DNA of 64,000 nucleotides from Tubulanus polymorphus (lineage: Eukaryota; Animalia; Nemertea). The first letter of the stretch is position 1; each line of letters begins with the position of its first letter. Made by a program: the position numbers and the translations under genes. The DNA lies in the NCBI RefSeq assembly GCF_964204645.1, contig NC_134034.1, positions 9,250,962 through 9,314,961 on the forward strand. Reading direction: 5' to 3'. Of this stretch, positions 145 through 30,560 are shown piece by piece. The notes below the pieces were generated by a model. That model was not told the origin of the DNA. It made no database searches and saw only the letters and a list, made by a program, of their open reading frames with translations.

Positions 145-161
145 TTATTTTACATATTTTC

Positions 162-1245: not shown

Positions 1246-1270
1246 AATTTGAAATAGTTTCTATAATATT

Positions 1271-1480: not shown

Positions 1481-1496
1481 TTATTTTAGTTAATTT

Positions 1497-3025: not shown

Positions 3026-3104
3026 TTTAATACTAATTTTTTTATTAAAATTGATTTTAGAAGTTATTCATTTATATGTTATTGATATATATGAATATTT
3101 TAAG

Positions 3105-3246
3105 AGTAATAGGGATAATGGTTAAAGGTTGAAGGGGCGAGTGAGTAAAAAATGAAAAATAAATTCGAGCGTGCGAGAATTTATTTTTTATTTTTATGAG
3201 CTCGACCGTTCGACCTTTGGCTTGAAACCCTATTATCCCTATTACT
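3105..3246. repeat. Terminal hairpin of the virus-like element
   Basis: AGTAATAGGGATAAT...AAATAAATTC-GAGCGTGCGA-GAATTTATTT...ATTATCCCTATTACT. Confidence 0.85.
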
Positions 3247-3283
3247 AATACGTAACGGTAAGAATATAAACGGCATCCTTTAG

Positions 3284-5748: not shown

Positions 5749-8700
5749 ATGGATGATGCTTGCTATATTGATAATATTAGTTGTCCATGGTGTGATGCTG
5801 TAGTGGTAGGTGAAAATGCATTTCTGGACCATGTGATAACTTACCATATTCCTACATGGCAGTGTGAAAGAAATGACGACCCATGTTGTAATGATTCCGT
5901 TTATAAAACCGGATGAGGAGATAATGTTAGTTTGCATGATTACACGCGTGGTAGTTGTGAAGGAATTAATTTTGAGACTGTGCCTCGAAATGTTAAGATC
6001 TGCTATCAATCTTGTAAACCCGATGAGAAATTCTCAGTAATTGATTAACCAATTCTGCCACCTCTTTCAGTTATTGAAAAATGTATAGTTAAGCTAGCCA
6101 GGCTAAATTCTCCTACAAAACAGAGAGACGAAAAATTTTGTGTCAAATTTTATGGTAGTCATGATTACTGTATTGGTTCATATGATTTTACTTCTCTAGA
6201 AGAAGCTAAACTACTGTTTTGTAATAAAAGTATAGGTGCTTCCGTGAGTGCTAAAAAAAATTGGTTTTTAGATGATTCTCGAAATGTCAGTCGTGAAAAT
6301 ACCATTATCAACCAAACAATTGCTGATTTCATGAGACTTATTCATGATCATTCTCCTAATATGGTTGACCCTGTTTTCAATACCAATCTTCTGGTTGAAG
6401 AACTGGCAACTATTCCAAGGCAGTATTGGCTAAGTAATTGGGTACTTTCCTATTTTGGTGATATTCTTACTGGAACAGTGCTTAATATCCATGTTGCATC
6501 AGTCTACTTAACTTCAATGACTCATTTCCCTATCATGATCCATCGGTTGTTACGTAGATATGAATCTGTACTTAATGCCCATTTAATTTTCCATTTTCTT
6601 GTAAGATATAATGAGGATGGTACAACCTCCATGTAAGGTGGTAATTATTTTTTGCCGTCTATTCAATAAGAAATAACGAACTCTTTATTTGTTGACACGA
6701 CTGGTTGTAGTATCCCTGAAATATTTTCTACAAATCTAGATAAAGGTTTGAAATTGTATGAACGTGATCCTATGACCGTAACTGTTTTCAATGACAATGA
6801 TTTTGATGGTAGAGATATTTATGTGGATTTTCACAACACTGTCTTTGATGATAGCTTCATCAGATGTGATGGGAATAGATCATTTTTGCTTAAATAGTGC
6901 CATAGTCCAGATGTGTCTCAAAAATATGGATCAGACCATATCTGCTCGTTACTTTGCAAAACGAATTACATGTTACAGACATGTTCATCTGTTTGCGGAG
7001 TTGCAGCTATAATTGGCATGGCAATCGCAGTGCTTGATCCTGAGCTATTTACAGCCATGACTGATTTTTCTATGGGTGCTACATTCCAAAATGAATTTGG
7101 ACATTTCCGTACAGTATCATATTTGAAAAATATTTCTGTTTATTCAGACTACCTAAGAAAAGTCTTAATTATCTGGCTCATCGAAGGGATTGATCTCCAA
7201 TTGATTTATCAAAAACACCAAAATGACCTTTGTAGCTCCACGCCTTTTCCTCAAACTTTTGTTGGTAAAACTATTCAACATGATTATTCTGATGATTATG
7301 CTGATGATTTTGTTGAAAATCCAATCGATACCTGCTAAAAATGTTTGCCTTGGTAAGTCTTCACAACGTACGAAATCAAATAGAAACAGTAAACAGCAAC
7401 CTGAATTTGATACTGAATCAATTAATGAATATCTCTTAAGCAGAACTCGCTTACAAAGAAAGAATATTCATTTTCTTTTAAAGTTAGATTTAGATTCAGT
7501 TTCAAAGATTTTTAAAGGTTCGGAATCAAATGTAACTGAAGTGGTTCAAAAAATGTTTAAGTGGTCCTACTGTAAAACAATGGATATTATCCAATTTATA
7601 TGATAAACATAGCACCCCCAAAAAATGCATCTAAAAAGAATTGGTGAAAGGAATTGAATGTTCCCTCTGATTTAATAACATATTTTTCCCATAATCCGGA
7701 TTTATGCTTTTTGATGAAACGTAAGGTTTTAAGATTACGTTTTCAAATAGGGCCTATAACACTGAATTACAAATTTAAATCCCAGTCAGATCAATTTTAT
7801 TCAAATGCTATTGAACAAATTAAGTCATTCATTCAAAGCTGCAAGTTCAGGGAAGATGTAATTACAAAAGTCAGTGAAAACTCCACTGAAACCAAATGAA
7901 ACAATTCCTATCCATACTTCCAAAACTATCTATGAGTTGATATCAGGAAAACCTAGATTTATTCAAAAACCAAATACTATTATATTACAAGTTACCCTAA
8001 AAGATGGCAAGGTACTACACAAGTCATTTTCTTGTGCTTCATTACTAGATTCTAAAACTGAGGTAATGGATGAAATAAATTTGTTTTTGGATAGTCCGGT
8101 TGCTATTGATTGGGTTAAAAAAGCTTGTGGCAAGTCAGTAGGTTCGAATTTTGATACAAATCGCCATGAATCTGAATGGATTGAGGAAGGCACTGTGGGT
8201 TGGGAATGAAACTAAAAAGTATTTTGATAAGATTCCTTTTGATTTTACAAAACGTCTCATAATTATAAAGGGGATTGAATCTCGATACAATTCAAATCAG
8301 GATACTGTTAAGGTTTCTGTCGTTAACAATATAAATTGGGGGAAAATTCATCGATTTGATGAGAAATACTATACATCTGATGATTCCTCCAATAACAGAT
8401 TATCCTGCTGTTCTTATGTGTATAAACTGTTCATCCCAATCTTCCCAGTGTTGGTACAAATGTGGTGCACTTCTTTCAAGCATCCAAGTGGATTCTTCTA
8501 TTTCTAATCGTCCTGCAATTTACTTGCAATTATAAAAGTGTGTAGTCATTGCTCTACAAAATCAACTTTTCATCCATTACCTCAGATAACTAGACGAATG
8601 AAGCATGTTGACAAGCATTTGATTATGAGAGCAATGACCCCTCAAGATGAAAATCCACTTTTAGGCTCCGATTGGCGTAATACTAAAAAGATTTTCGAAG

Positions 8701-9855
8701 CCAATTTTGATTCTGTTCTGCTTTTTCAGCGTGGTAACCAAAATTGAGGAAGGGAGTATTTGATTATTCTAAGTAAAACGATTGTTTAGTATATCTACGT
8801 AAATATGGTAAGCATATATTAGGTTTAGATGTGAAACATGACTTCATGTCAGCTAGGTATAAAACGGCATTTATCACATTTGCTGACGAAAACAACAGCG
8901 GCCGCTTAGGAGCAGTTTCAATTTCAAAAAAAGAAGATAGTACTTTTCATGCCATAACATTACAAATTATCATTGCTAATATACCATGCAATGATAAAAA
9001 ATGCAGTCATCCAGTTGAATTCTATTTCTTCAATGATGGTAATGGCTTTTTCCAGATTAGGCCCTGTTCTTTTAATAGTCCTATACACCCCAGAATTCAG
9101 CATGATAAGGATGACGGCATGCGAGCCGGTGTAGCGGAAACTAGTCTATCTAGTGTCCTTTGTAATTTTCATTCTTTGCAAGCTTATCGACGCCATCTTA
9201 ATGAAAACCCTCATCTTAAATGTTTGCTCCGTCCACTTGAAACAGGTTTTAAACGTATCACGCGTGCATGGGATGAAAGTTCCAAATTGAATTTGATAGA
9301 TAACTATTTATATTTTATAAAGAAAATATCTCCCTCACTTTTAAGTGAAAAGACAAAGGATAAACTTGCCCATTATTTGAAAACATATTGGTTTAATTCA
9401 GACTGGTCTAAATCATTTACTGCTATCCCACTTTATGTAACTCACCGGTATGACCGGTGAAATCCTCTACTTATAACGGACAATATCAGAGAGCGTATAT
9501 TTCGTGATGTGTATGATACCTATTTTGGTGGTCATTTAAACAAGCTCATGGCCAATTTGATTATTCGACTTCTAGATAATGTATTAGAAGACAATTTGAA
9601 ATATTGTAGAAACCTTTCCACAGCATCATTCTTAAGAAGGAAGGGAAATATTCTTAAAAAGTCTTAGGAGATTCAAAAGATTTCGAGGGCATTGAATATT
9701 GTAGAAAAGGTGTGTTTTTTTATGAACAATCTTGCTGGGCACTAGTTTCAAGTGATTCAGTAAAAGCTATTTCAATTGGTCAAATTTATCTTACAGACCA
9801 ATCAAACCTTGAGGCCGATGAAGTTGATAAGCTTTTCACTCCATCAAGCAATGTG
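5749..9855 (+). pseudogene. Degenerate MULE-like transposase ORF with upstream C2H2, PWWP-like and Ulp1 (C48) protease regions
   Basis: Reading through stops and frameshifts: CPWC..HVITYH; VKFYGSHDY; WLSN...GGNYF...FVDT...LQTCSSVCGV; then DVKHD...QHDKD...LCNFH...YLKTYW...TDNIRE (DDE with CxxH). Confidence 0.65.
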
Positions 9856-10330
9856 AGTAATAGGGAAAGTAGGGGTTCAAGCCAGAGGTCGAGAGGTCGA
9901 GCTCATAAAAAAAATAAAAAAATAAATTCTCGTACACTCGAATTTATTTTTTTATTTTTTTTATGAGCTCAACCTCTCGACCTCTGACTTGAACCCCTAC
10001 TTTCCCTATTACTCTTAAAATATTCATATGTATATACGAATAACATATAAATGAATAACTTTTAAAATCAATTTTAATAAAAAATTTAGTATTAAAATGG
10101 AAGCAAATAAATTCTACTGTTCAACATGTAAAATCAATATAGATAAATCTCAAAAAGCAAGACACAATATAACTAAAATACATTTAGAGAATAAATTAAA
10201 GTTAAAATATAAAGATGATATATTAGAAACTAAATTAGATGAATTAAAGAATGAAAAAGAAACATACAAATGTGATATGTGTAATCAATCATTCAGTGAT
10301 AAAAAATATTATAAAGGACATGGTTAAAGC
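9856..10330 (+). mobile_element. Second copy of the hairpin-ended virus-like element (terminus, promoter, truncated ORF)
   Basis: Near-perfect 158-bp hairpin at 9856-10013. Segment 10004-10100 matches the reverse complement of 3022-3115. Confidence 0.8.
10097..10327 (+). CDS. Truncated C2H2 zinc-finger ORF
   Basis: FYCSTC...RHNITKIH and YKCDMC...; preceded by TTAAAATG. Confidence 0.55.
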   Translation: MEANKFYCSTCKINIDKSQKARHNITKIHLENKLKLKYKDDILETKLDELKNEKETYKCDMCNQSFSDKKYYKGHG

Positions 10331-10449
10331 AAAGATATTTGTTGAATTATGGAATAGTATTTCACAGAATCAACCGCATTCTGAGCTTTTAATCAGTGGT
10401 TAGAAAACCGGCAATTCTATTTGAGCCTTGTATGTATATAATACATAGC

Positions 10450-11819
10450 TTTTGCTTACATTAATGAGGTGCAATCACAAGATTTTTCCGTGCGTCCAGC
10501 CCTTGCCGATCGTCCTACAAGGGTAAGACGTATGCCTGAACGGTTTGCTGACTATCAGGTTGGCGCTTTAACGGTAGGTCCTTCGTGGCAACAGAAGCTG
10601 GATACTTTGTTACTGGCAAGCAAAGATGCTTCGATAAGCGGAAAACCGACTCTGTTGGCAGCGGTCTTGAAACTGTGTGAATAAGTATTTTTAAAATGTC
10701 ATCAAATGTCCGGGTTATTGAAACATGTATATCCATTATTTATCCAGTATATCCATTATTTTGCGTTGTGCGTTTTAATTCATTTTGGGTTTTTTTTTCT
10801 TGTCTCTTCATTTTCGTGATGTCTATAAGATGAAGTCGTGTATTACGACAAATTCTTTGAAGCTACGTCGCTTCTTATGTGTTTATTTATCTCGATCTGG
10901 GGACAGATTTTCTTTGGAAGGGTGGTGTAGATATGCCGGGTCTTTCAATATATATATATTAATTTATGTGTGTGATGTAAGTTACACGCATGTATGTGAA
11001 ACTTGGTGTAAAGTTTGAAGTGAATTTTTTTTAGAATTAGTGTTATAAATAACTGTGGGAGTGGTTTGGATTTTGTTTATGTAAATTCTATTAAGTCACT
11101 AGTAATTAAGAGCGTGTAGTTGTTCTTGGTCGGTAATCTGTGGTTTTTTTTAATGATTTCTCGCTGCGTTCCGTCCATCTGGAAGGTTGGGAATTTTAGA
11201 AAATATTAGATTGCTTAAACGACATCCTGTTTATGTCACTTATTTCGGGGACGAAAGTTCTTGACGTTAAGGGAGGGTGTTGCCGGGCTGTTTATTCGGC
11301 GGTATAATTGATAGCCTCCGTTCGGTGCTGCCATCTTCATGGTCTGCATATAGTTTGAAGTCTTGGCGGGAACAGTGTTAGTTTGTTGGCGGTCGCCTTC
11401 CAGGCAACCACTCTGTGAAATATATGTTGATTTGATTTACACTGTTCCCGCAGGTAAGAAAGCTTCGTATGATTCTGACTTAATTATTTAGCATGTGTAA
11501 TATTTATTGGTTAGTTTGTTGGCGGTCGCCTTCCAGGCAACCACTCTGTGAAATATATGTTGATTTGATTTACACTGTTCCCGCAGGTCTTTCGTTGTTG
11601 TTTAATGTTGGTTGGTGGAGTGGACCTCCGGACAGACGAGGCATATACAGGATTTGCAAGAAAGCCCCGTCACATTGCATCACAAAAAGCCCCTAACTTG
11701 ACTTCAGGTGAAGAGAAGGGACTTTTCCTATTAAATAAAAAAGACAAAGCAAGAATAAGTCGTATTTCCTTCAAACGACAATCAACTACGATCATCCGAT
11801 AAAGTTAAATTCCGCCACA
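10450..11819 (+). mobile_element. 3' end of a Gypsy-like LTR retrotransposon with LTR at about 11278-11819
   Basis: Integrase-tail motif RPTRVRRMPERFADY; purine tract AAGGGAGGG directly before TGTTGCCGG; end CCGCCACA; AATAAA at about 11733. Confidence 0.65.
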
Positions 11820-12659
11820 AACTATCGCCCCCTAGCTCTCTGAAGAGATAGGGAACCAGTCAAACTGGTCAATTCAATTCAGAATTTATTTAACAGAAAG
11901 GCAGTTTTAAGTTTTAGATAAGCTGAAATCGTATAAATGTCATACAAAGATTTTTTCAAGTGGCCGCTATTGCAAGCACCCAATGAAAGTATAGGAAAAT
12001 TAAAATAATATTTAAAAACGTGAAAGTAAGTGTTTTATTGTGCAATTTTAATTGTGTCAATAAAGAATGAATTGAATTGTCCATCAGCACTATGCCGCGC
12101 ATGAATACTAATGTCAAGAGTGATCACGCACGTTCAGCCAAGGATGGCGTGCGCTGTTGAAATAACAAAACCGATGAAATAAAATCATAGAAGAAAGAAA
12201 ACGACAGCCGATATAGCCAATATACGAAAGGATTTTCTTACTGCATTAAATGTGTGTAAATATCAGAGCCCAAGATAATTTCTAACGAAAGTTATCGACT
12301 CCCCAAGCATGTTATCAATCCGTGTGATAGCAATATGGGCTTGCAAGCTTGCAAGTCTGCACGCCCATGAAAATGATAATAATAAATATAGCCGCGAAGC
12401 AGGGCTCTAATGCGGGTCACTGAAGTATTTAGCCACTTTTTAGTCAATCATCTATACCGAGTTTCTGTAAGATGGTGAGATTTTTCATACATAGTCAGTT
12501 ATACAATTTATGATTTATGCGTACATTTTCAATTAAATTAAATCTCATTGAGCCCAAACTAGTTTTTGCCACACTCGAGTTTATTACAGTCACTATTTCG
12601 AGACACAGACCAATCCCCTTGAAATATCACCTGACTTTTCTTTTTATCCCTGTCGCAGA

Positions 12660-13013
12660 TGGTTAGTGACGCCATATCGTAACGATGGCAATATGACTCG
12701 AGCTCGTTGACGATTTAATTACTTGTTGTCCAGTAATAGAGCAGTCATAGAAAGAGCGTTTGGTAGAGTTAAAGGTCGATTTAGGCGTCTCCATTATGTC
12801 AATGTCCATTCCATTAAAAAAATTATTATGATCATCACCTCTGCATTTGTCTTGCATAATATCTGTTCAATGTCAGATGAAGATGATCTTGAAGATTTAC
12901 ATGACGTTGTTGACGATGGCCTGGAGGCAAATAATGGTGCCGAGATCATAGGTGCTGATCATGAAGGAGAACAGTATAGAAACGATTTAAGATTGCAATT
13001 GGTTGGAGAGTAG
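12660..13013 (+). pseudogene. Harbinger (HARBI1-like) transposase, last exon with an in-frame stop
   Basis: After a CAG acceptor: WLVTPYRNDG...*RFNYLLSSNRAVIERAFGRVKGRFRRL...VLHNIC. Confidence 0.85.
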
Positions 13014-14080
13014 TATATCTTCTACCTTGCATACAAAGTTTTAATGCATTTGTAACACTTAAGTCATTAAATTAGTATTCAAGTCATTTCTTTTTGTCCA
13101 ATTCAATTATTTGCACACAGGTGACACAGAAATTTGGTTTAGAGACTGAGGATGTTTGATGTATCAACTTTTATCAAAATGCGGCCTCGACTCCCTGCCC
13201 CATTAGAATTTCGCCAATTTTAGACTGCCTTAATAGCCACAATAACAACAATTGTTTTCATTATAATATACGAGGAGTTTAAAGCAATCAATTTCGAATT
13301 TATCATAACAGTGCATGCCTGGCTTTATGTGCAAAGTATACTATGCGTTGGAATTTTTGTGGCTATTAAAGTTTCTGCCAAATGTTTATCATTCAAACTT
13401 CTCGGTTAACCTTACACTGGATGCTGACCAGGGCCCCTAACTCCTTCCAAACCAAAAATGTTTTTCAAGGTCCTTGGATTTTGAAAATTTTAAGGTTTAA
13501 GGCCTAGTTGTTATACAAACAGATTCTACTGAATTAAATGGTTTACCTGGATAAACAGTACTGATTTAGGAGTCTTAAATTGTGATATGAAAGTGATGTA
13601 TACACTCCTCGAAAAGTCCTTGAATTCTGGAATGACTGATCCGTAGGAACCCTGCTGATTGGAAACTGTTTCTCTGTTCCATGCCGCCCACAATTTTACT
13701 AAAGAGAATGCCATGAAAGGTATTACAGCAAAGGAACAAAATGTTATTATAAACGTAAAATAAAATTTTTATTATGGAAATCCTCCATCATAAAATTATA
13801 AAAATATAAATGATAATATAATTTCCCCATTTTATCACGTAACCAAAATTTCCCTCATTTTTAGAACCGCTCCCCTTTCCGCAAATTCAAGCAGTATGTA
13901 ATAGGATTGTGAAATGGTATAGTACGAGATATACCGTACCATAAGTCATTTACAAATATTTTCAATCAATTCAGTGAAAACTGTAATGGACAACTGAAAA
14001 AAAACTTGAGGTAGTCAGACTTATGCGTACCTTTTATCATAAAACAGCATTTAAAATACTGTATTGAACAAGCTGGATCT

Positions 14081-15660
14081 TTACTTTTTTGAAATAGCAC
14101 TTACAAAATCTTTGAACAAAGACATTTTTTCATTATGCATTTGCATGGCCATGTCCTTGTCTATTTTACGTCGTTCCTCAGCTCTTTCTTCCATGGCCCC
14201 CAAATATTCAATTACTGTTGAAGCTGCTGATTTTTTTGACGTTCTACATTTATCCGATGGAGAGATTTCATCGAGCTTTCGTTTTTTAACAATAGGTGAT
14301 AATTCACTATCATCATCAGTAGATGAATCATGAAGAGGATTACTATCTCTACTACTGAAAGTAACTGGATTTATATTTGCCGATTTTACACCAAGAGCGT
14401 CATCCAGCTCATTTTCATACACATAATCTTTGACATAGCCTGAACCCGATTTATTTTTTGCATCTTTTACATTTTTATACCCTGTATTTATAGTTCTCCA
14501 TCTACCCCTTATTTGCTCAGCACTAAAATCAAAATCATCATTCTGCATTTCTTTTGCAATCTTCATCCACAACATGGACTTACGCATCTTCCCTTCATTT
14601 ACTTTATCAATATTTTTGCGATACAAATCGATCAACTTGAGGGTTGACTGTTTGGTCCATTTTCCACTTGCAGTACCAGCCTCGTCCACTATTACACTCC
14701 GAGTTTCGGAATCAGTTAGATTTTCAATTGACCCTGAAAAAATACCTAGTCTAATAACTTTGGAAGAATAAACCATCACATGTTTTTAAATACTTTGCAA
14801 CCAAATCCTTTCCCAATTTTAAAAAAATAATGTTTTGTTGATTTTCTGCAGTATTCCAATGTTAATGCTTCTTGACTTCCTTATTGCCAACTGCCAAATG
14901 AATCTACTAAAATATTAAATTTGGCCACGATGCCCCTGAAATATATGTTTAATATGCAGTTAGATAGAAAACATTCGAATATGATGCATATATACATACC
15001 TGAAGTTGATGCTTCTTTATTTTCAATATGAAATGCTACACCGGCATCTTGCGTTTCTCCTATAATTTAATCAAGGCGACAAATTTAAAACTGGAATTTT
15101 GACACGTACAACTTACAAAACCGTTCAAAAAGTGAAAACGGGCCTCTAGCCAGGTAGAGTGATTCTTTAAAAATATGCATACCGGTGCCACCCTGTGCAC
15201 AAAACGTATCATAATTTCGTAGCAGAGTTTTCAGAATACATGTATCTAAAAATATTACATAAACAAGAAATCAACATGTACTGACATGTATCAACATGTA
15301 CGAGATAATGAAGATTAGAGTTAACTACAAAACTCCATGAATTAAAAGTCATCTAAATATTTAAATCATTAGTTGAAAAAGGCAAGTCATGAATTAACCT
15401 AAATTACCATATTCATTGTGGCACAGTTAAGTCGACTTATTATGAAAAGTTACACTAAACACAAGTAACACTACGACACTGAATTGATTCTGCATTCATT
15501 CTAATGAGGTTCAGTATGCCGCCACAGCTTATCCCTTACCTCTTTGATGAATTATTCTATTATAGATATCATTTTCGACGACAAGTGTTATCGTCTGGCC
15601 ATTCCTCTCAATCGTTAAGGCTTTTGTTGAACCAAGGTTGTCCTGGCCAGAAGGTGCTCT
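14081..15660 (-). CDS. Myb/SANT-like DNA-binding protein of the Harbinger element (multi-exon; start uncertain)
   Basis: KWTKQSTLKLIDLY...LWMKIAKEM...FSAEQIRGRWRTI...YENELD; small upstream GT-AG exons near 15000-15060, 15183-15240 and 15540-15660; convergent with the transposase. Confidence 0.8.
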
Positions 15661-16839: not shown

Positions 16840-17823
16840 ATGAACGCCACACAGGCTGAACTTGTAGACGAGATAGACTATTCATACGCGTCCGGGTTTA
16901 TCGAACATTTTGCGCAGACGGCAACCGGTCAAAACTTGTGGTTCTTCGTGTATTACTTCGCGATCGGATTTCCACTAGGAATCACGGGTAATACTCTATC
17001 GCTGATCGTCATGTTAACGAAGCGCATGCGCAAGTATTCGTACGCGTCGTTTTTGGCCGCATTGGCGTTTTACGACAACCTCATGTGCTGTATCTATCTC
17101 ATCGCTTGGATCAACGCCATAATTTACATTCTCAATCGCGTCGTATATTTTCGTTTCACTTCGACCGCCGTTTGCTTTTTCATGGAGTACATTTACGATT
17201 TCGCTCTGAACGGCAGTATGTGGTGCGTGGTCGTCATCAGTATGGAGCGGTTCGTTATAGTATGTTTCCCGTTGAAAGGACGCCAGATTTGCACGTGTAA
17301 AACGGCTCGAATTCTGATGCTAGTTTTGCCCGTGTGCGTGTCCATATACTGCTATATTTCAAACATCATTCACGAATATCGACCGGGTTTCGGGTGTTTC
17401 ATAACCGCAGACGAGCGCCGTATCGATTATATCCAAGGATCGCTAGACTATATCATTCCCGGAGTATTAATCCTATGTTTTAACGTCGCTATTATAGTTA
17501 TGTCGACGCGAAGTAGAGGACTAGGAAGCGGTGGGGGTAAGGACGATAAAATCAGACGAATAACGGTAACTTTAGTGATTTTAGCCTTGGTGTTTTTAGC
17601 GTTCATGGCTCCGGTCGGCGTGATAGCGATGATGATAACGTTTTGGCCGTTAAAGATGGCCTATCTAGGCCCGGTGTTCAACACGGCAACGATCGTTATG
17701 CCGATCAATTTTATGGTGAATTTCTACATATATGTTTTAACAGGTTCGGAAATTCGGTTGGCGCTGCGTGACCTGTTCAATTTATCGAATTCTAAATCTG
17801 AATGTCTCCGGAAACCTCAGTGA
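16840..17823 (+). CDS. Intronless class A (rhodopsin-like) GPCR, peptide-receptor/chemoreceptor-like
   Basis: Seven hydrophobic segments; GN in TM1, LAxxD in TM2, MERF (DRY equivalent) followed by VCFPLK, and NFYIY (NPxxY equivalent). Confidence 0.92.
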   Translation: MNATQAELVDEIDYSYASGFIEHFAQTATGQNLWFFVYYFAIGFPLGITGNTLSLIVMLTKRMRKYSYASFLAALAFYDNLMCCIYLIAWINAIIYILNRVVYFRFTSTAVCFFMEYIYDFALNGSMWCVVVISMERFVIVCFPLKGRQICTCKTARILMLVLPVCVSIYCYISNIIHEYRPGFGCFITADERRIDYIQGSLDYIIPGVLILCFNVAIIVMSTRSRGLGSGGGKDDKIRRITVTLVILALVFLAFMAPVGVIAMMITFWPLKMAYLGPVFNTATIVMPINFMVNFYIYVLTGSEIRLALRDLFNLSNSKSECLRKPQ

Positions 17824-18959: not shown

Positions 18960-19282
18960 CGGCCCCACGATCCCAGCTTCTCTATATTAGTTGAATCTAC
19001 CCTTGGCCCGACGATCCCAGCCTCTTTACGTTAGACGAATCTACCTCTGGCCCCACGATCCCCAAGTCTCTTTAAGTGAATCTACACACTGTCCGACTAT
19101 CTCAGCCTCTTTATATTAGGCTAATTTATATTTGGCCTCACGATACCCCAGCCTCTTTACATTAGGTTAATCTACCTTTGGCCCCACGATACCAGCCTCT
19201 TTATTTAGACAAATCTACCTTTGGCCCCACGATACCCCAGCCTCTTTAAATTAGGTGAATCTACACACAGCCCTACGATCCC
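18960..19282. repeat. Degenerate ~43-bp minisatellite, about 7 copies
   Basis: Variants of GGCCCCACGATCCCAGCCTCTTTATATTAGNTGAATCTACCTT. Confidence 0.8.
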
Positions 19283-19916
19283 AAAAACAGATGTTGCATC
19301 TTTTTGAGCTCCTAGATGCAGATGCTTATACGTGGATAGTGGAATTTTCAAAGGCAAAAATACTCCCCACTTGCAGACATTACATTTAGAGCGATAGCAT
19401 GTGCAGTTGCCGGTGTCATGGGACCAAATACCGTAGTGGAGACGAATGGCGGGGCTATCGAGATATCCGTGAATACCTTCCTTCCATGCGTTTGTTACAG
19501 TGGGGGCGGGAAGTTTATGATCATGTTTTCAGGTCAGCAGGTAATGTCTTCAAAGAATTTCACTCTCGCATTGATTAAAAAACTTGTCATTCGACACATA
19601 ATTGTGATAACAATAGTGGTATCATCGACTTAATATACGTGTACTTAGATATTGTTATCATTTGAATTTGGTATACGGTCCGTGTTCCGTTCCGCTCCGT
19701 TTCGTTCCATTCCGTTCCGGTAATTACAGTAAGCCTCCCCACGATGGGACGGCCTTTGAAGTGTTGCCCGCACACTGTAAGCAGCAAGCAGGATTCGACC
19801 CACTTGTCACTCAGCACTGATAGTTGATGCAACAGCAGGGCAGCATAACGTCTTATCTCACGCAACTACTGAATGTCCATTTCAACGATAAAAGTCTTCT
19901 TAGGACTTGGTTTGAG

Positions 19917-19952
19917 CAGGGAAGTGTGATGAGATCTCATCACACTTCCCTG
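19917..19952. repeat. Perfect 36-bp palindrome (mini-MITE)
   Basis: CAGGGAAGTGTGATGAGATCTCATCACACTTCCCTG; related to 45323-45348. Confidence 0.9.
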
Positions 19953-20113: not shown

Positions 20114-22929
20114 ACCTTTCGAATTTTTACGTGAGGGAACTGTTCTCGCCAAATCTGGTAAAACGTCGATGACTTGCAGAATTTTTCGGCCGAATCTTCT
20201 TTACATTTCTTATAAAGGCGCCAAACGTCAATCTTTCTACTTGCCTGGGGTAGCCAAGCTTCTTGTTTATGTGGAGCAAATTCTGCATTCATATTTAGAT
20301 ACTCTTCAAGCCAGGTAGCTGCTTCATTGTATCGTTGAGTATGACATCGTCCTAATTGTTTGTTTGACAATCCTTTTACAATTCTGTAGAAAGAATTTTT
20401 ATTCAGTCCATGAGCTAGAAGCCAAGCTTGCTGACAGACGTAATCCCCACTTATTATATATCTTGATGGATGTGAAGAATCTTTGTTTATATTCTTTACA
20501 CTATCTCGCACATATTGATTCCTATCTTTCTGCAGTCGACCCCAAAAATCCTCTCGTATTCTTCTGACACTTTCAATCGTAAATTTGTCGGTGCATCTCT
20601 GTCTAGAACAACATTTTTTGAAGGCCTTTGAAATAGCCGCTGCACTTGTCTTCTTAGCAACATTAGTTTCTCTGTACCTCCATTCACCTAAAGTGTAAAA
20701 CTGTTTTGTGAAACTTTTCCGCTAGATAGTTTGAATAAGTTATACTATATAATATACTTGTCCGAGAACACGTACATACCTCTATAGTATGTTTTCTTTA
20801 CTTGAGGGCTGATCATGCTGTTATTGAAATCCACTGCATTTTGAAAGGATATATTGTGTCCTCCCTCTTCCTGGTTCACTGTGTAATTTGTATGAATAGG
20901 ATAAGCGTTAACTCATAATTAAGAAGAAAAATATTAGAATGAAGTGAGTTGACTAATCGGTGATTCTTGCCTTCGATGATTAACGAGCTACATGATGAAT
21001 ATGCACTTTTGGTGTCGGAAACATCTTTTTCATATTCTGTTAAACCTAAATGACAAAAAGTTGGTTTTAGCTCGGAAAAACGAAATTGAAAATACCGACA
21101 TAAAAACCGTTAGGTTCCTGTTAGTATAGAATTCGCAATAACATTCTTACCATCGAGCGATGACAAACAGTGAAGGGAACTTAAATTCGTGTTTCCATCA
21201 AGGGATGAACAAGATGACTCTGGATCTGAATATCCGTCTTCACAAGTACATGTAAATTAAAATATTGAATGTACATTGAATCCCTATTGCAAAACTGTGA
21301 GAAATACGTGGGAAAATAGTCAATTCCATCGTCCAACGCAGTAAATACTTTGTTTATGCTTCAATTTGTTTAACTTAGCAGACTTTTCGGGGATAGAGGA
21401 AGACACTACAGATAAAGTACTAACCGGATAGTTTATCTTTCTTTTTTGGAGTACTTGCAACAATTCTTTTCGATGTCGTTTTGCTGAAGCCTACCGGATT
21501 ACAACAAGATAACTTCAATACTGTATAGGTTAATACGCATCGAACAAAAATGAAGAGGCATTGATAAGAAATCAATTAAACTACCTGGTATATTTTCTAC
21601 TGGGCCTGTTTCAAAATCATAAATACTGTAGGTTTCTTCTATGGAAATTAAGAAAGTTTTTGTTTTAAACATAAGTATGAAAATTAAGAGAAGTATGAGA
21701 AAATACAGAGATTTCAAAAACCCACCATTAAAACTGGGTTGGTACGAGGATTCGTCATTGACATCGTCAACTAAATGTATATGATTTAATATATAACGGT
21801 TTTAAATCGTATGGACATAAAAAAACAATTCATTCAGTCACTGATAGTCTATTTTACCTGTAAAGCTAGGTTCGTATATCGACTTATCTTCACTTGCTGA
21901 TAACAGCCTGTCAGCTATTTAAAACATAATTTGGTCAATTATGGCACAAGACCAGCTATAAAAAGACTGAAGAATCACAAAGTAGGCCTACGGGTAATCG
22001 TTGGTTCAGAAATGTGTAACCGAACAAAACTTACTATTTGAATGGAAGCTCGAATGATATATCGATTCGTCGTGATTAGCAGTGAATAACGGAGCCGGGT
22101 CTGCTTAAATATGAATAAATAGAATTCCTTCGTGTATTTCATAGCCTTTGAAAGAAGTATCAGTTACTAGCAAAGAGACCGTTCTGGGCGGGTTTAATCA
22201 TAATTGAGTTTGAGTTGATTATTTTGCATTTCGTGTCGAGAACAACGGGTATTTTTCATCTTAAAAATTGGTCCCGCTTATTCATCGAACTCGGATTACA
22301 TGTGCCCGTTGAGACCGGGTCTTTTACAGGTGTTTATACACCGGTCCTTCACCAACTAAATATGTCCCGTGCCCGGTGGAGGCCGCCTGTAGCAAAACTG
22401 TAGCAAAAGATATGCAGCATTAGTGAGACAAATATATTCCCTACGCTACTGCGATTTTTGCTTGAGTTATAAGTCATTGAGGTTGTAGGTAAAAATCCCC
22501 TGAGTATTTGTTTGACAAAATAGCCTTTGGATATTTCAAACAGTGCAAATAATCGCTAAGACAGATCATTATGTTAAACCAATGAATACAGTAATCTCTC
22601 CCTGCAGAGAAGGCAGGTCAGCCACGTGTCTGTAGGCAAGCAGCTGGATGTAGCGGGCAACTGTTTATTTTGCTCAGAGCACGCAGTGACGTCACACAGA
22701 GTGACCAAAATTAAATGGTCCAAAAATCTACCTAAACTTTATCGTATCCACACACAATCGATTCTTAAACTTACACGCGGTCAGTGCCTTTCATTTGGTA
22801 CGAAAAAACCTGTTAATCCAAAGCACACAGACCGTGCCAATCCGTGACAAAGTTTCGGCGTTTGTCTCCTATAGAAAAGATTAACTGTGATAATTATGAG
22901 ATGGACGTTATTAACCTATACTTACCCAT
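20114..22929 (-). CDS. Multi-exon gene for the N-terminal part of a Sola/DUF7869-like transposase; 3' part not found
   Basis: Candidate first exon ATG G|GTAAGT at 22929, then several phase-1 micro-exons. Open exon 20114-20688 reads KCCSRQRCTDKF...IREDFW...RNQYV...VCQQAWLLAHGL...WLPQ..RKIDVWRLY...STFYQIWREQFPHVKIRK|gt. Confidence 0.65.
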
Positions 22930-23576
22930 TTTGAAGTATTTTCTATTTTACTCGAAATAAGTGGTTGTTTTACTGATATAGAAAAGCATTGTGTACTGTA
23001 TTTCATACGACACTGGTTGCAAAAGGTTCCGTTGAAAAACTAGTTTTCCATACGTTTTATGATAAAATGGACACCTTGAATATAATATCCAAGTTCGCTA
23101 CGTTAAACCTTTGAATGACTAACCAACATAAAGTTTAACAATTAGCAACATAGATGCTTGAAGGGATTTTAGATTGTAATGTGCTCAAAACATTATAAAA
23201 ACAGCAGATGTTCTGCCAAAATGTTTCTCTTAACTTAAGGCACATTTTCGACCACTCATGTCTCGGTTCTTTGGCATGTGCTTTTGCAATATTCACAATT
23301 GTTTGTTCACATCGTGTCAAAATGCATTAACGATTAATTGTTTACTTCGTGTCATTTTGATATGTTTAACGAGCAATTAACTCAATGTTTAACTAACTAT
23401 GCATTAAATCTGCTCATCGTCATATTCATCAATAATTGAACTGCACTACTAATTAAGAGGCCCTTTATTCAATCGTAAATTCGGGTTTTGCCAATAGTGG
23501 ATATAAATGAGCGAGTTCAAGTAACACATTTTAACAGAAACCGTTTGCCTGAATCGGATATTTCGATATTTTTGAA

Positions 23577-26500
23577 ATGGCAAACATATCGGGTACGTTT
23601 TTTCATGAGCGCAACTGGACGATACGATCTATAACTACCAATATACCTTCTTTAATAATACGAAACATAGCCGATGAAGATGAACAATTTGGATTGATAG
23701 AAGATATACGACCGGCTAACAAAGTTGGATCTGTAAAAGTAAGTCCTACAACACATCGTACTATAGCTGAATTTCCTAGGAGAAAACTCCACACTAAAAA
23801 TTGTGATTTTTATTTTAGGTTCACTTGAGAAGTGGACAAATCATACTACTTGCGTTGCAAAACTTTATCGCCTCACGATCTGCCCCAAGAATAAGCAATC
23901 AATCGAAGCAGTCACGTTCCAGTTTCATCCAAGAATTCATGAATATATATAAACAAAATGGTAAGACAATGAGATGGATAAAACGCTTTGCTTATTATAA
24001 TCTTTGTGTCACGTCTCTCATTAAAATAGTTAGAAACTTAACAGGCAATCTACGTACTTATTTTATTGCAATACACCTATATATGTCCTCTTCCACCAAA
24101 ATGAGGGTTGGTTAGGTTTTCTGAATCCAATTATTGACTCAAATTAGATATTCTCCCAGACACATTAAAACAGTCATAATATGCAAAATAATTTTTTGAA
24201 TATTCTTCTAGTTTCAATCGATAAAGAATCCGTCGGTTCGTCCACCATGAACAACAGTTGCTGCGCATCCGTTTCGGGTAAGATAAATTGGAAAAACCTT
24301 GAACACTAGTAATTTGTGCAAAATAGAGAGGTTCTTAGGCTCAATCATATTATTTTTCTAGGTCCTGATAATCCTGAAAAATTGAATGCATTGGCATATT
24401 TCAAAGGTGAATATTATATTTTGGTATCATTTTCGCAATCATACCATTGAAATTATATTACATATAATATATAGTGTTCATTAAGTGTCTTCATATATGA
24501 ATGCCATATATCGATATATTTCATTCTTCATTTATAGAAATCACTATTATCTCCGTTGACCGCCTCATAGCACCTACCTGGGAAATAAGCTTACGCGATT
24601 TGAATAGCAAGCATGTCAAATTCCTAAAAGATCGCTTTCTCAAAGAGCCTCAAGTACACAGCATTTTCTTGGTACGGGAGAGTGATGAACACAAGGGGAA
24701 ATTTGAAATTATTGGCGGAAACCATTCTAGAGTTGCATTGCAAGAAATAATGGATGATGAAGGTAGAGTTTCCTATCATCTATTTGCATCGAACTGTAAT
24801 TTTGACACATGTTGCCCATCTAAACAGACAAAGGTTTTTGTAACTCCAACGAGTCAACCAATTAACCCTAGGCCCAACTTGTGGGCAATTACTTAACCAA
24901 TGAATTCATAAGTTAACTTTACGATTTTCACCTTACGTTTAATGACGAAATATTGGACTCTTTGAACTGCTTCGTAAATTAGATATAACATTAATTCTTT
25001 TCCGTCAAAATTTAACAGAACAGAATTGTGTTGCTAACCTCCCCGTCATTAAAATACGGTAGCTCATACCACCCATCGATTGAAATAATTCAGTTTCTCT
25101 CCAGGGCTCCATTCAGTAAATAAATCCATGAATAGCTCAATCCACGATAACTGAATACAAAAATAGATGATAGTTGCCAACAGTGCACCATCAGCCTACG
25201 TACATATTTTGGGCAGTTCCCCCAGTTTCTATTCTTCAGTATGATATTTACATAAAGATGCACGCAAAATACATATTTAGGTTATATCATGGAGTTTTAT
25301 ATGTCCATAGTTATATGGAATAATAGTCGCATATCATTACATGTATTTGAATATTGACTCTTAGATAGTTTAATCGTTTAATGCTTACTGAAAATCAAAT
25401 CAAATGATGTTTCGTTTCGTCTTACTAGTGGCCATCGTCATGTATAAAAATGAAATGCCACAGTAGGAAAAATGCCAAACGAAGTTATTTCAATACATGA
25501 ATTTAAGTGAAACTGCAATAATTGTTAACAATCTTATTTATGGTCTCTTTCTATCCAATTTCTTACTTATATTCGCGATTGTATTTCAGCACCCCCTCCC
25601 CAGTTTGCCCTTCTTTAATTCTGTTTAGCCTGTAACTTGTTAACGTGGCACATTGTGATGCTGGATTTTTCTCATTCACAGAGATCGACTATGACACGAA
25701 GCAGGTATACAAGACACAGCTATGTCGAGTATACACAAAAGATATGCCCAATGATGTAGCTCTACACCTGGCCCTGGAACATAATTATTCAAATAAACGC
25801 GTATTGGACACGAAGTTCGTCGACTTGGTAAAAACAATGCGCATTGCATTGTTCTCAAAAGCTAACCTAAGAAATATAGGGCTGGACCCACCATCTGACC
25901 AAAGGACGATACAGAACTGGAAGATATCTCTTGAAGTTTTCTTTGGAATGCAGGTTACAATCGTTTACGTCAAATGCTTCTTGAAATTATTCGCGTATTC
26001 AATGTTTTATTAAAAGCTTTTAATGGTATTGTTTACTTATTTATAGAGAAAACAACTAAACAACGCTTATCGAATTCATATGCGAGCCGCTCAGTTTAAC
26101 TCAGAGATTTGGAAGTTGTGGGTTGACTTTTACACAAAGTGGAGTGAAGGGGATCTGAAAGGCCAACAGTATGATTCCAAAGGCTATATGGATGAGCGCC
26201 CGTTAAGACCAATTACGGTGAAAACCGTTACCCCATTAATGCGGCTAGACAATAAACAAATGGAGTATACCCTCAGGAAACTTATCGACCGCAAATTAGA
26301 GATTAAGAATATTACTCTGCATGTATCTGAAATGTAAGAACTGACGTAATCGAAGTCGTAAATCAAATAGTCAATTTATCAATACCAACCGATGTACAAT
26401 TTCATTACACCACAATTAAAAACGTACAAAATTTCAGACTCTCATTCAGGTTTGTTTGAAACGTTTCAAGGGATATGGGATGAGGAATGTTAAGTAAAAG

Positions 26501-28400
26501 AGTGAGCGAAATTTAGAGCGTAATTTACGCACGAGAAGGAGTCGCTATTCTTTTTCCGATATTCTACCAGTTAATAAATTAGGTTATAAAGATAGTTAAT
26601 TTATTCTAAAACCTTGAGCAGTGATAAGATAATATTCTGATTTTCAGGCAAAAGTCAAGTGCGCAGGTACCCCAGAAAGTACCTAGTTCTAAGGTACGGT
26701 TTATATCAATGTAACTATTACGACTTATGCGTGTTTCCGTGAAATTGTGAATAACAAGAATCGTTTCTTACAGATAAATTTGCATAGTGAAATGGAGTTC
26801 GAAACCACTGGTAATGAAGACGATCACCCGCAAAATATAGAGGTAGAAACATTTAAAAAAATCTATCCCACCTCCCCGATTCACTCAAAGATGGGTCCGC
26901 TCATTATTATTTCTATTTCCACACAGAGTACACGACTAAGTTTCGTTGACTCAGAACCGGCAACCAACTTGAGTCTCGAGATCTCTGAAATTCCAGTGCA
27001 CCAGGGTGAAACAATGGACATTCTTTCATCTGAGCTTGACGCAATTAAGGTAAAGCATCCATCAATATTCATAGTCCAATGTTATGAGAAGCCAAATATG
27101 CAACACACATATTTTATTCTAATGTTTATATTTCATATTCCAAGGAAAAGTCTTCCATGCTGGAACGGACAGTAGAGAAATTGAAAAAAGAGAAAGAGCA
27201 ATCTGAAGTATGCTACCCGGTGTTCTCCTGAAAAAAAATCTCCATTAATTCACTACAATATTTAACTTATAAACTTGGTATTTAGGAGTCATTGCGTGTA
27301 CTGAAAGTGAAAAACATATGTTTAGAGGATGAATTAAAGCGACTGAAGGTACCAATACCGGTTTAATGATTAAACATTTCTTCTAAAATGTCGCTTGTAT
27401 TGCTTCTTTAGAAATTTAATTCATAGAATTATTCAAACATATCTTATGTTTTTATAGCAAAGTCATACTGAGAAGGATAACGAAATAAGACATTTAAAAA
27501 AGGTGGGCATGAGCTGGATTTATGGTTTATTATTGTAATGCATTAAATCAAAGTAAATTGTGATGAGTTAAATTTTTCGTTTACCTGTGAATTTACAAAC
27601 ACTATTTCAATTTCGATTGTTATTTCAGATTGAATCAGCTGCAAAAAAAACGAAAAATCCAGGCAGGAGAAGTCGGTATGTCACCGTAATATTATTCGGA
27701 AGTTTTCGCACCTAAAGCTGCTGTGAAGTGAATTTTCAAATATTTATTCTTGGAAGTTATCTAATTTGATAATTCTAATTAATGTTTTCTGATTTTCATA
27801 TATCAATCTCAATACATGATATTCAAATCCTTTTACTCATTGATTTGATGTAAAAAAAATTGGACCTATATAATGAATCGTGATAAACACATTTTATTAC
27901 GATATTTCTTAATATAGTCGAGATGGTGAATATAAGTGTCGTGTCACCAGATTTCGACAAAAGCCTTTCTCTGTACGACGTTGGCGATGATTCCCTAGCA
28001 ACAGAGGTATGATAAGACTCTACGTTAAAATATGTACTTGATTGTATCTCAACAAGCTTTATTTTTTTTATCTTAACTTATTCTTTATTTCTATTTCCAG
28101 ATTCAAGAAGGTGATGTCTTGTTGGTTGATTGGGTCGGGTATGGCATATATTTAGCTGTATATAAGGAAGGAATGCTGTGGAATGCGAAGAAGCCAGTTT
28201 ATAAGAATAACCGACATGTCATTAATTCAGAAGATTATTTATTACTGAATGCTGAAGATAAACAAGAACTGAAATGTGGAGGGAAGACTTTTATATGTAA
28301 AGTTCCAGCTTCACTGGACGATGTTGAATCATCAATAATTGGAGTAAAAGATGCTTGGATTTACCTTATGGTGAAAAAATATATACAGAGTAAAATGTAA
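23577..28400 (+). CDS. 17-exon gene: ParB/Srx-like domain, coiled coil and small C-terminal beta-rich domain
   Basis: GT-AG exons join in compatible phases except for one extra A in the A8 run at 27643-27650. Motifs: LRDLNSKHVKFLKDRF, FEIIGGNHSRVALQEI, CRVY...VALHLALEHN. Confidence 0.75.
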
Positions 28401-28719
28401 ATATTTCTATTTAGTCGTTATAAAGACTTGATTTAGACACCGATAATACCGATTAGACGCGAATATCGTAACGAAGAATAACTCAATGTGCATACTTCAG
28501 ATCACTGCTGGATATTCATAACACTTGAAAGTCAGAGTATTCATTGAACATTGTAGTTGGTTTATTTGCTAGTCTAGATTACTATTCGAACACTATTAAA
28601 CTGCCACGATTTAGCGGAAATCCACCCACTTAAAGTGGATTACCATGAATTAAACCGAAGAACGTATAAACACGCTATAATCGCAGCGTGACAATATATA
28701 AATATTATATATTAATACA

Positions 28720-29017
28720 TTAATATACGTAATTGCTAGGCCTATATTAATATACGTAATTGCTAGGCCTATATTGATATACGTAATTGCTAGGCCTATA
28801 TTAATATACGTAATTGCTAGGCCTATATTAATATACGTAATTGCTAGGCCTATATTAATATACGTAATTGCTAGGCCTATATTGATATACGTAATTGCTA
28901 GGCCTATATTGATATACGTAATTGCTAGGCCTATATTAATATACGTAATTGCTAGGCCTATATTAATATACATAATTGCTAGGCCTATATTAATATACAT
29001 AATTGCTAGGCCTATAT
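28720..29017. repeat. 27-bp minisatellite, about 11 copies
   Basis: GCTAGGCCTATATTAATATACGTAATT in tandem. Confidence 0.95.
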
Positions 29018-29539
29018 AATTTCGTACCAGTTAATTTTTATCAATATGTGTTTGGTTATTTTTACGTTCCTGTAGGGTAGAATAGAATATTGAGTGTTGA
29101 GTCTGAACCGAATATTGTTCATTGTCTAATAAAGTTAGCTGAGATTTTTTGAAATTTTTGCTTTGTTTTCTACTTTCTTGAAGTCGATTCTTTGGTGGAT
29201 TTTAGAATTCTAATGTCGAGTTGAAATGAGGTCCGCATATCACAGTATTTGAGTCTATTTTGGCCAGAGGCTTGGATTTTGACATTCCATGCCAAAATGA
29301 GTTCCCGGAACTCACTGTTGCTGGGTTTTCGGTAACGCTAGCCATTGAGGATAGGAATTTGATTAGACCGGTGTCCGCTGTGCGCAAATCAATGACATAA
29401 TAACCAAACATCGCCGATTCTAAGCCGGCTTGAGATTGAGGTTAAGTGGCTCCCGTGGCTTCAATTCAAAGAAAACAGGTTTTCACCTACTCCAAATTTA
29501 AGCCGAAAACAGGGAAATTAACTGTATTTTCCTTATTTG

Positions 29540-30560
29540 TCGCATACATGCTTATATTCGTTTGAGGGCTGTTCCCTAATACCGACGTGTCACGCTTCCG
29601 CCCCGCGAAACGGACACTTTCTCTTTTGGGTCATACGAACTGTTATTACCAGAGAGACTGTCATCTCTATTAGAGAGACCATCTCCATCACCCGAACTAC
29701 CGTTACCGGCTGACAAAGGCCTGTTATCCATGTTTCTACTCGGACATACGCGACGGATATGCCCAACGCCGCCACAGGAAAAACACGTCCGCTGCGAAGG
29801 TGTGGGCAGCCTTGGACGAAACCCAAACGAAGAAGCTCCTCCGTAGCCCTACCTGACTCCTAAAGGGAGGTCTTGGAGGAGGGACCCACAACCTAGGACG
29901 GTTCTCCAATTTAGCCTCGATAGCGGCCATCCGCTTCATCACCTGATCAAAACGCCTTTCCCACGAGGAGGCGGGATCCCCAGAGTGACCGGGTGTGTCT
30001 TTCGAAGACACTTGAGAATTCATAAGTTTTTTCGGAGGCACCACAGACTTGGAATCTCTCCGTTCCGTTTCCCCTTCAATCTTTCTAGCCTCTGTTACGA
30101 TCTCGTAATAGGTCGCGTTGGAATAAAAGAGAAAGCGTGTTCCCATGCGCACCATCTCATTACGGAGACCACGCCAAAACTGACCACGGAGTGTCTCGGA
30201 ACCGACAGCGCCCGCTCCTCCTGGCAGACCACGGACACGAGCAGCTACATCCTCAAGCCTACAAGACCACTGTGCCACTGACTCGTCCGCCTTCTGCGAA
30301 ATCATATAAAACTGGGCTAAGCCTTCCTCTACCGAAAAGATTTCCCCAAAAACAACCTCTCTAGAATGGTGGATACATCCGCGTTCGGACCACAATTAAA
30401 CAGAACAGCCGCAGCATCCCCTCTGAGGGAAGTATATTTTTGATAATGACTCATACCATAAGATGATAAATTATGTCTTACGATGCTAAACAGACAGGAA
30501 CGGGGAGGGACTAGCATGGCCCACGACGTGCCGCTAGAGTGAACTCAATACCATTGACTT
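29540..30560 (-). mobile_element. Gypsy-like gag fragment (PNMA/retrotransposon capsid plus CCHC knuckle), frameshifted
   Basis: QFYMISQKADESVAQWSCRLE...LRGQFWRGLRNE; RTCFSCGGVGHIRRVCP at about 29740-29795 in another frame. Confidence 0.85.

What the first reader, a model, noticed from the sequence alone, without database searches (positions are those of the whole stretch)
20114..28400. Head-to-head pair: Sola/DUF7869-like transposase gene and a spliced ParB/Srx-fold gene, a candidate two-gene transposon system
Seen: two intron-rich genes diverge from a ~650-bp spacer (candidate ATGs at 22929 minus and 23577 plus). The plus gene assembles into 17 GT-AG exons encoding FEIIGGNHSRVALQEI and VALHLALEHN. 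Known: ParB/Srx domains use a GxxRxxA nucleotide-binding motif and a downstream ALxEN helix; bacterial ParB is a CTP-dependent DNA clamp; some DNA transposon superfamilies (Harbinger, CACTA, Kolobok) carry a second gene. Inference: this may be a large eukaryotic DNA transposon whose accessory protein is a nuclear ParB-like NTP-binding or clamp protein. I do not know of this pairing being described for Sola-like elements.
Basis: partly seen in the sequence, partly recalled or inferred. Interest (0 to 1): 0.85.

Follow-up and report, generated by a model that had tools for sequence, protein, structure and literature searches.

The report
Animal Sola1 transposon carrying ParB-like gene
This is a broken copy of a cut-and-paste transposon from an invertebrate animal that carries, back to back with its transposase, a second gene resembling the bacterial chromosome-segregation protein ParB; the pairing was reported in a brown alga, but I found no report of it in animals or in this methylase-free form.

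Summary
The plus gene (17 exons, 651 aa) is ParB-fold: a relative of exon 6 folds onto Noc/ParB/Spo0J (Foldseek E=6e-8). The minus gene is only the N-terminal half of a Sola1/DUF7869 transposase. Its catalytic half and left end are missing, and it stops at a 36-bp palindrome near 19935.

The pairing is real and conserved. An oyster copy has the same two genes head-to-head. So does an 11-kb TIR-bounded element that I found with the transposase alone. Both carry arrays of 12-14-bp palindromes near both ends.

The pairing is not new in itself: Ectocarpus Sola1-1_Ec32 carries a ParB-methyltransferase gene opposite its transposase (PMC12477816). New here are the animal hosts, a version with a coiled coil and no methyltransferase, and an altered active site: GNH[ST]RxA and HN instead of GERRxRA and EN, so both catalytic glutamates are lost.

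Most likely the protein is a dimeric DNA binder that marks the element's own palindrome arrays, probably without CTP hydrolysis. Nucleotide binding, clamping and the DNA target are inferred, not shown.

The parts
23577..28400 (+). ParB-like accessory gene, 17 exons, 651 aa: small N-terminal domain, ParB/Srx fold (exons 6-7), helical domain (exons 7-8), acidic linker, coiled coil (exons 12-15), C-terminal beta-rich domain (exon 17)
24538..24762 (+). Exon 6: ParB nucleotide-pocket half with the invariant E-x-x-G-G-N-H-S/T-R-x-A motif
25682..25953 (+). Exon 7: end of the ParB domain (ALEHN helix) and start of the helical domain
   Evidence: 40% identity to L009, E=7e-14
26047..26333 (+). Exon 8: helical domain, inferred DNA-binding region
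   Evidence: Foldseek alignments of relative P0003 span about 250 columns
27145..27675 (+). Exons 12-15: predicted coiled coil and a KKRK basic stretch (possible NLS); exon 15 acceptor uncertain
   Evidence: oyster relatives have a coiled-coil-like region at the same place
28101..28400 (+). Exon 17: C-terminal domain, weakly similar to the last exon of the oyster relatives; no methyltransferase
   Evidence: inconclusive
22930..23576 (.). 647-bp divergent spacer, inferred bidirectional promoter
20780..22929 (-). Transposase exons 1-9: Ser/Asp-rich low-complexity N-terminus in small phase-1 exons
   Evidence: L012 transposase also begins with an acidic Ser-rich exon
20116..20687 (-). Transposase exon 10: conserved Sola1 N-terminal region with weak RFX-like winged-helix hit; ends at a phase-0 intron shared with L012
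   Evidence: (27% identity, E=4e-19)
19917..19952 (.). Perfect 36-bp palindrome at the apparent truncation point; its transposase-side arm holds an out-of-frame KCDE-like relic of the next exon (L012 has KCDVC there)
   Evidence: breakpoint role inferred
28708..29017 (.). 27-bp tandem array (11 copies) whose units carry a 12-bp AT palindrome (12 of 14 window matches lie here) and an 8-bp palindrome; candidate subterminal binding array
   Evidence: membership in the element inferred
29028..29032 (+). Candidate right terminus (CAGTT, as in the oyster element) just after the array; unverified, no partner end found

Best explanation
The region is a left-truncated, non-autonomous copy of a two-gene Sola1 (DUF7869-type) DNA transposon from an invertebrate. 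Shown: in intact relatives a DDD/E transposase and a ParB-fold gene diverge from a short spacer inside one element, with palindrome arrays near both ends. Inferred mechanism: the accessory protein enters the nucleus and dimerises through its coiled coil. Its ParB-type helical domain binds the element's own 12-14-bp palindromes, as ParB binds parS and Noc binds its sites. The ParB pocket probably binds a nucleotide but hydrolyses it poorly, because both catalytic glutamates are replaced. It would then form stable protein patches near both ends that help end pairing or transposase loading, or keep the element's chromatin open. In the alga, and perhaps in L012, a methyltransferase rides on this DNA-binding module; the window and oyster versions lack it.
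For: Fold: model of relative P0003 matches Noc, ParB, KorB and Spo0J (best E=6e-8, 24 hits at E<=0.001) and phage ParBs; relative P0001 hits Pfam DndB below cut-off (E=1e-4). Linkage: S. echinata P0007 is head-to-head with a DUF7869 gene. L012, found with the transposase alone, has a whole transposase matching exon 10 (E=4e-19) and a head-to-head ParB-like gene. Mobility: two S. echinata copies are 98% identical over 10 kb and diverge at a common end. L012 has TIRs (45 nt, 82%). Oyster end AACTG and L012 ends TACTG resemble the AACCG ends of Sola1-1_Ec32. Arrays: 30 copies of a 12-bp palindrome in two clusters in L012 (shuffle maximum 2); 9-15 copies of a degenerate 14-bp palindrome in oyster copies, on both sides in L001. 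Literature precedent. Role of E78/E111 in hydrolysis: PMC8494293.
Against: The window copy has no catalytic exons, TIR pair or TSD. Four ParB-like loci with at least 5 kb upstream (L002, L003, L004, L006) show no transposase there. The fold was shown on a relative (46% identical to exon 6), not on the window protein; the model has mean pLDDT 71 and rmsd of 6-16 A, so the HTH equivalence is loose. The Arg equivalent to B. subtilis R80, needed for CTP binding, is Ser/Thr. The arrays could be transposase sites instead. The window's array is AT-rich and could be a host satellite.
Confidence: 0.6

Rival explanations
1. Same element, but the palindrome arrays are bound by the transposase's own winged-helix region. 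The ParB-like protein instead acts at the divergent promoter as a KorB-like regulator, or on the transposase by protein contact.
For: Exon 10 has a weak RFX DNA-binding hit (E=0.007). The L012 palindrome has the GTTG-N6-CAAC outline of an RFX X-box (from my own knowledge, not tested). KorB is among the fold hits.
Against: The RFX hit is below Pfam's cut-off and absent for the L012 exon. Oyster copies L002 and L004 keep both the arrays and the ParB gene with no transposase nearby. Bostrychia ParB-like PAG3 genes also sit beside inverted-repeat arrays in a different transposon superfamily.
Confidence: 0.2
2. The protein is a true nucleotide-gated sliding clamp in the nucleus: it loads at the palindromes, closes on CTP or ATP using the shifted invariant Arg, and spreads along the element.
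For: ParB-like order of domains with a C-terminal dimerisation region; invariant R, E, GGN, R and A across 11 sequences; parS-like arrays. Hydrolysis-dead ParB mutants still close and load.
Against: Canonical R80, E78 and E111 equivalents are all changed. No biochemical data. Nucleosomes would hinder sliding (inference).
Confidence: 0.15
3. The ParB-like gene in this window is a domesticated host gene or idle passenger, and the transposase half is an inert relic beside it.
For: The ParB-like ORF is intact over 17 exons while the transposase is cut. L002 and L004, from two Saccostrea species, share upstream non-coding sequence and show no transposase there.
Against: The transposase half is also stop-free with intact splice sites, as expected of a recent truncation. 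Near-identical dispersed copies exist in oyster. The linkage recurs in distant lineages.
Confidence: 0.05

Closest known systems
Sola1-1_Ec32 of Ectocarpus (PMC12477816)
   Same: Sola1 transposase with the same N-terminal and catalytic motif series (by eye); a ParB-like gene on the opposite strand; similar termini (AACCG vs AACTG/TACTG).
   Different: The algal accessory protein (1104 aa) has an N4/N6 DNA methyltransferase; the window and oyster proteins have a coiled coil and a small C-terminal domain instead. The paper's text as read does not state head-to-head orientation or palindrome arrays. Direct homology of the two ParB domains was not tested (accessory sequence not seen in the part read, and it has no reference).
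Plavaka accessory gene PAG3 of Bostrychia (bioRxiv 10.1101/2025.02.11.637652)
   Same: ParB-like N-terminal domain in a DNA transposon, next to tandem arrays of inverted repeats proposed as its binding sites.
   Different: EnSpm/Plavaka superfamily, three accessory genes, PAG3 fused to a putative 2OG oxygenase; red algae.
Bacterial ParB/Spo0J, Noc, KorB, PadC
   Same: ParB/Srx fold followed by a helical domain; C-terminal dimerisation region (inferred); palindromic candidate sites.
   Different: GNH[ST]RxA and HN replace GERRxRA and EN; no ParA partner; spliced gene inside a transposon. In lacking the catalytic glutamates it resembles PadC, which binds but does not hydrolyse CTP.
Sulfiredoxin (Srx)
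   Same: Shared fold core (Foldseek E about 2e-3).
   Different: No catalytic Cys in the motif; large extra domains; best hits are ParB/Noc rather than Srx.
Two-gene DNA transposons (Harbinger Myb/SANT gene, VANDAL anti-silencing protein)
   Same: An accessory DNA-binding protein encoded beside the transposase and acting on its own element (analogy; VANDAL cited).
   Different: Unrelated protein fold and transposase superfamily; Harbinger genes are tail-to-tail.

Membership tests
Sola1 DNA transposon | DDD/E catalytic core (DUF7869 region) in this copy | tested here: not met
   No hit in the window from oyster or L012 catalytic exons. Present in relatives L001 and L012. Explained by truncation.
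Sola1 DNA transposon | Transposase N-terminal region homologous to that of a complete DUF7869 transposase | tested here: met
   Exon 10 vs L012 exon: 27% identity, E=4e-19, same intron position.
Sola1 DNA transposon | DUF7869-type transposase is Sola1 rather than Sola2 or Sola3 | tested here: inconclusive
   Motif series matches the Sola1-1_Ec32 transposase by eye and not the Sola2-1 fragment. No alignment or tree was run, as that sequence has no reference.
Sola1 DNA transposon | Terminal inverted repeats with AACCG-like ends | tested here: inconclusive
   No pair in the window; one candidate right end at 29028-29032. Met in L012 and at the oyster right end.
Sola1 DNA transposon | 4-bp target site duplication | tested here: inconclusive
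   Cannot be read in the window. L012 flanks are TGAA/TGCA, 3 of 4, and the right flank lies in a short repeat.
Sola1 DNA transposon | Dispersed multiple copies in the host genome | not testable with these tools
   Only 64 kb of this genome is available. Met for the oyster family.
ParB CTPase clamp | ParB/Srx fold | tested here: met
   On relative P0003, linked to window exon 6 at E=2e-4 among 1.84 billion proteins. The joined window protein was not folded.
ParB CTPase clamp | GxxRxxA (GERRxRA) motif | tested here: not met
   G-N-H-S/T-R-x-A in window and relatives; Arg shifted by one, Glu replaced by Asn.
ParB CTPase clamp | ENLQR motif with catalytic Glu | tested here: not met
   H-N instead of E-N in all members covering the site.
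ParB CTPase clamp | HTH DNA-binding domain after the nucleotide domain | tested here: inconclusive
   Helical domain aligns through about 250 Foldseek columns, but pLDDT is 55-70 there and rmsd is high.
ParB CTPase clamp | Cognate palindromic DNA site | tested here: inconclusive
   Arrays are clear in L012 and the oyster copies; candidate array in the window; binding not shown.
ParB CTPase clamp | CTP binding, clamp closure and sliding | not testable with these tools
   Needs biochemistry.
Sulfiredoxin | Catalytic Cys in the GCHR motif | tested here: not met
   Asn at that position.
ParB-methyltransferase accessory protein (Ectocarpus type) | C-terminal N4/N6 DNA methyltransferase domain | tested here: not met
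   None in window exons or oyster proteins. L012 has a motif-I-like stretch by eye only, with no Pfam, NCBIfam or PDB hit.

The most novel reading that the evidence does not exclude
Animal Sola1 transposons encode their own ParB-parS-like system: a nucleotide-gated, slowly hydrolysing clamp that loads on palindrome arrays at both ends of the element inside the nucleus. It would be a first ParB-type clamp acting on animal chromatin, used for end pairing or anti-silencing.
Probability: 0.2. Interest if true: 0.9.

Novelty: new variant of a known kind. Interest (0 to 1): 0.58.

Why it matters
It extends ParB-bearing DNA transposons from algae to animals: oysters, the window's host, and a third probable animal. 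It also shows the ParB module kept where no methyltransferase is attached, which suggests the module has its own job. Each element family has a different palindrome array, giving matched protein-site pairs. These make the algal papers' untested proposal, that such proteins bind their own transposon, directly testable, along with whether a ParB-type clamp can work on eukaryotic chromatin. The family is missed by Pfam and NCBIfam and is annotated as uncharacterised in oyster genomes.

Tried and rejected
Pfam and NCBIfam scans of window exons gave no ParB or DUF7869 hit. Sequence-profile searches of PDB missed ParB; only the fold search found it. A word-based homologue search with exon 10 found nothing, which says nothing of longer relatives. 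The single-sequence model of exon 10 was unusable (pLDDT 41) and was not searched. Contigs for P0003 and P0004 were not on record, and those for P0006 and P0014 came without DNA. TIR searches in the window gave only chance-level pairs. Homology of exon 17 to the oyster C-terminal domain is unresolved (blastp none, hhalign 0.3%, shuffle z 3.5 and 2.3). Rejected: sulfiredoxin (no Cys); a bacterial origin for L012 despite its Nitrospirales label (GT-AG introns, adjacent Helitron); linking the nearby Myb/SANT ORF to this element (it has its own Harbinger-like neighbour). The original Sola paper was not held. The Ectocarpus transposase has no reference, so it was compared by eye only.
Full report
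Context. The window is AT-rich, repeat-rich animal DNA with many introns of about 80-100 bp. The named relatives are from oysters, so I take the host for an invertebrate; nothing suggests human sequence. The host was not identified.

Observation. Two intron-rich genes diverge from a 647-bp spacer. The plus gene can be built from 17 GT-AG exons into a stop-free 651-aa frame. One junction is uncertain: exon 15 needs the second of two AGs. The minus gene has 10 exons (386 aa): nine small Ser/Asp-rich exons and a 190-aa exon 10 that ends at a phase-0 donor.

The plus gene is ParB-fold. Exon 6 found four relatives among 1.84 billion proteins (E 3e-5 to 2e-4). Their sequences continue into matches to exons 7 and 8, and metagenome contig L009 matches exon 7 at 40% and shares the exon 7/8 junction. 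Profile searches extended the family to Saccostrea and Magallana oysters, all annotated as uncharacterised. An AlphaFold model of relative P0003 (pLDDT 71) matched Noc, ParB, KorB and Spo0J over about 250 columns (best E=6e-8), with sulfiredoxin lower; phage ParBs gave the same picture. The active site is not canonical. Across 11 sequences it reads G-N-H-S/T-R-x-A and H-N, where B. subtilis ParB has GERRY/F and ENLQR. E78 and E111 are needed for CTP hydrolysis and R80 for binding (PMC8494293). Both glutamates are replaced and the Arg is shifted by one place. After the helical domain, window and oyster proteins have a linker, a coiled coil and a small C-terminal domain; homology of that last domain is unresolved. 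No methyltransferase was found.

The minus gene is half a Sola1 transposase. Exon 10 has no DUF7869 hit of its own. It matches the N-terminal exon of a complete DUF7869 transposase in L012 at 27% identity (E=4e-19) with the same intron position. Catalytic exons from oyster and L012 find nothing in the window. The gene ends at a perfect 36-bp palindrome (19917-19952) whose near arm holds an out-of-frame KCDE-like relic of the next exon; I read this as the breakpoint (inference). No TIR pair or TSD survives. The published Sola1-1_Ec32 transposase shows the same motif series by eye, which is my basis for Sola1.

The pairing is conserved and mobile. In S. echinata (L001) the ParB-like gene is head-to-head with a DUF7869 gene, although an internal deletion has removed both N-termini. 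A second copy (L002) is 98% identical over 10 kb and diverges at a common end reading AACTG inward. The least biased test was L012, found with the transposase alone. It is labelled a Nitrospirales MAG but is eukaryotic: it has GT-AG introns and a Helitron next door. It holds an element at 2636-13586 with TIRs, TACTG ends and TGAA/TGCA flanks, a whole transposase, and a head-to-head ParB-like gene. Against this, four ParB-like loci with at least 5 kb upstream show no transposase there (L002, L003, L004, L006). Nested insertions and long introns are common in these copies, so this is weak evidence, but it is unexplained.

Palindrome arrays. L012 has 30 copies of a 12-bp palindrome in two clusters, one near each end (shuffle maximum 2). 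The Saccostrea copies have 9-15 copies of a different, degenerate 14-bp palindrome, on both sides in L001; L003 has none of that motif. In the window a 27-bp array begins about 310 bp after the ParB-like stop and holds 12 of the window's 14 matches to a 12-bp palindrome, followed by CAGTT, a candidate end. A tandem array inflates such counts and this one may be a host satellite, so its role is a lead only.

How it most likely works. Shown: element type, gene pair, fold of a relative, altered motifs, arrays in relatives. Inferred: nuclear entry, dimerisation by the coiled coil, binding of the element's own palindromes, weak or no hydrolysis, and a role in end pairing, transposase loading or anti-silencing. 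I put 0.9 on the element identity and 0.6 on the whole account. The main rival (0.2) is that the transposase binds the arrays, since exon 10 has a weak RFX-like hit. A true sliding clamp gets 0.15 as the main mode of action, and domestication 0.05.

Comparison with what is known. Ectocarpus Sola1-1_Ec32 carries a 1104-aa ParB-like plus N4/N6 methyltransferase gene opposite its transposase (PMC12477816). Bostrychia Plavaka elements carry a ParB-like PAG3 gene beside inverted-repeat arrays (bioRxiv 10.1101/2025.02.11.637652). ParB-HTH fusions to chlorophyte Dam methylases were described earlier (PMC4738411). So the pairing is known in algae. My searches found no report in animals and no paper naming DUF7869, within a library that lacks most subscription journals and Repbase reports. 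L012 may bridge the forms: its ParB gene ends in a methyltransferase-like stretch by eye, unsupported by any profile. The protein works like ParB in fold but fails membership as a canonical ParB CTPase.

Verdict. A real, truncated copy of a two-gene Sola1 transposon: a new variant of a known kind. Interest 0.58. The animal range, methylase-free architecture, altered active site and matched palindrome arrays are new and testable, but the basic pairing has been published and the mechanism is untested.

Noticed in passing
window 3017-10105: A region bounded by long inverted repeats (75 nt, 93%; further arms at 3179-3246 and 9856-9923) containing several ORF pieces that look MULE/SWIM-like by eye; no Pfam hit. 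Related palindromic ends occur at 46570-47887.
   Followed up: partly
window 1-3025: Very AT-rich stretch (GC 21-25%) with two intronless minus-strand ORFs (1497-2081, 2321-3025); the second looks like an HNH-type protein of large DNA viruses or Polintons by eye; no Pfam hit.
   Followed up: partly
window 12600-14800: Harbinger-like tail-to-tail relics: a transposase 3' end on plus (about 12660-12990, by eye) and a Myb/SANT ORF at 14081-14779 on minus (Pfam E=2e-13).
   Followed up: partly
window 16840-17823: Intronless rhodopsin-family GPCR (Pfam 7tm_1), with short inverted matches to its sequence and 5' flank near 50362-50471.
   Followed up: partly
window 18961-19283 and 19684-19719: 44-bp tandem repeat and a 5-bp microsatellite just beyond the transposase break, probably other repeats inserted or adjacent.
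   Followed up: no
window 29736-30395: Gag-like ORF on minus (by eye; no Pfam hit), suggesting an LTR retrotransposon relic right of the element.
   Followed up: partly
window 43845-44495: GIY-YIG ORF, Penelope-like (Pfam E=3e-6).
   Followed up: partly
L012 (CBDBCZ010000012.1) 1-20096: Contig of a genome labelled Nitrospirales holds spliced genes and a Helitron with an OTU domain: eukaryotic contamination in a bacterial MAG. A 29-bp satellite flanks the Sola1 element on both sides.
   Followed up: partly
L012 3356-3589 minus: C-terminal exon of the ParB-like gene resembles a degenerate N4/N6 methyltransferase motif by eye; no profile support.
   Followed up: partly
L004 26546-32370: The annotated F5/8 type C gene overlaps the palindrome array of the oyster element, so that gene model may be a chimera.
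   Followed up: no
L002 2792-10157 and L004 1126-8205: The two Saccostrea species share non-coding blocks for 7 kb upstream of the ParB-like gene with no transposase exons seen; orthologous insertion or long element interior, unresolved.
   Followed up: partly
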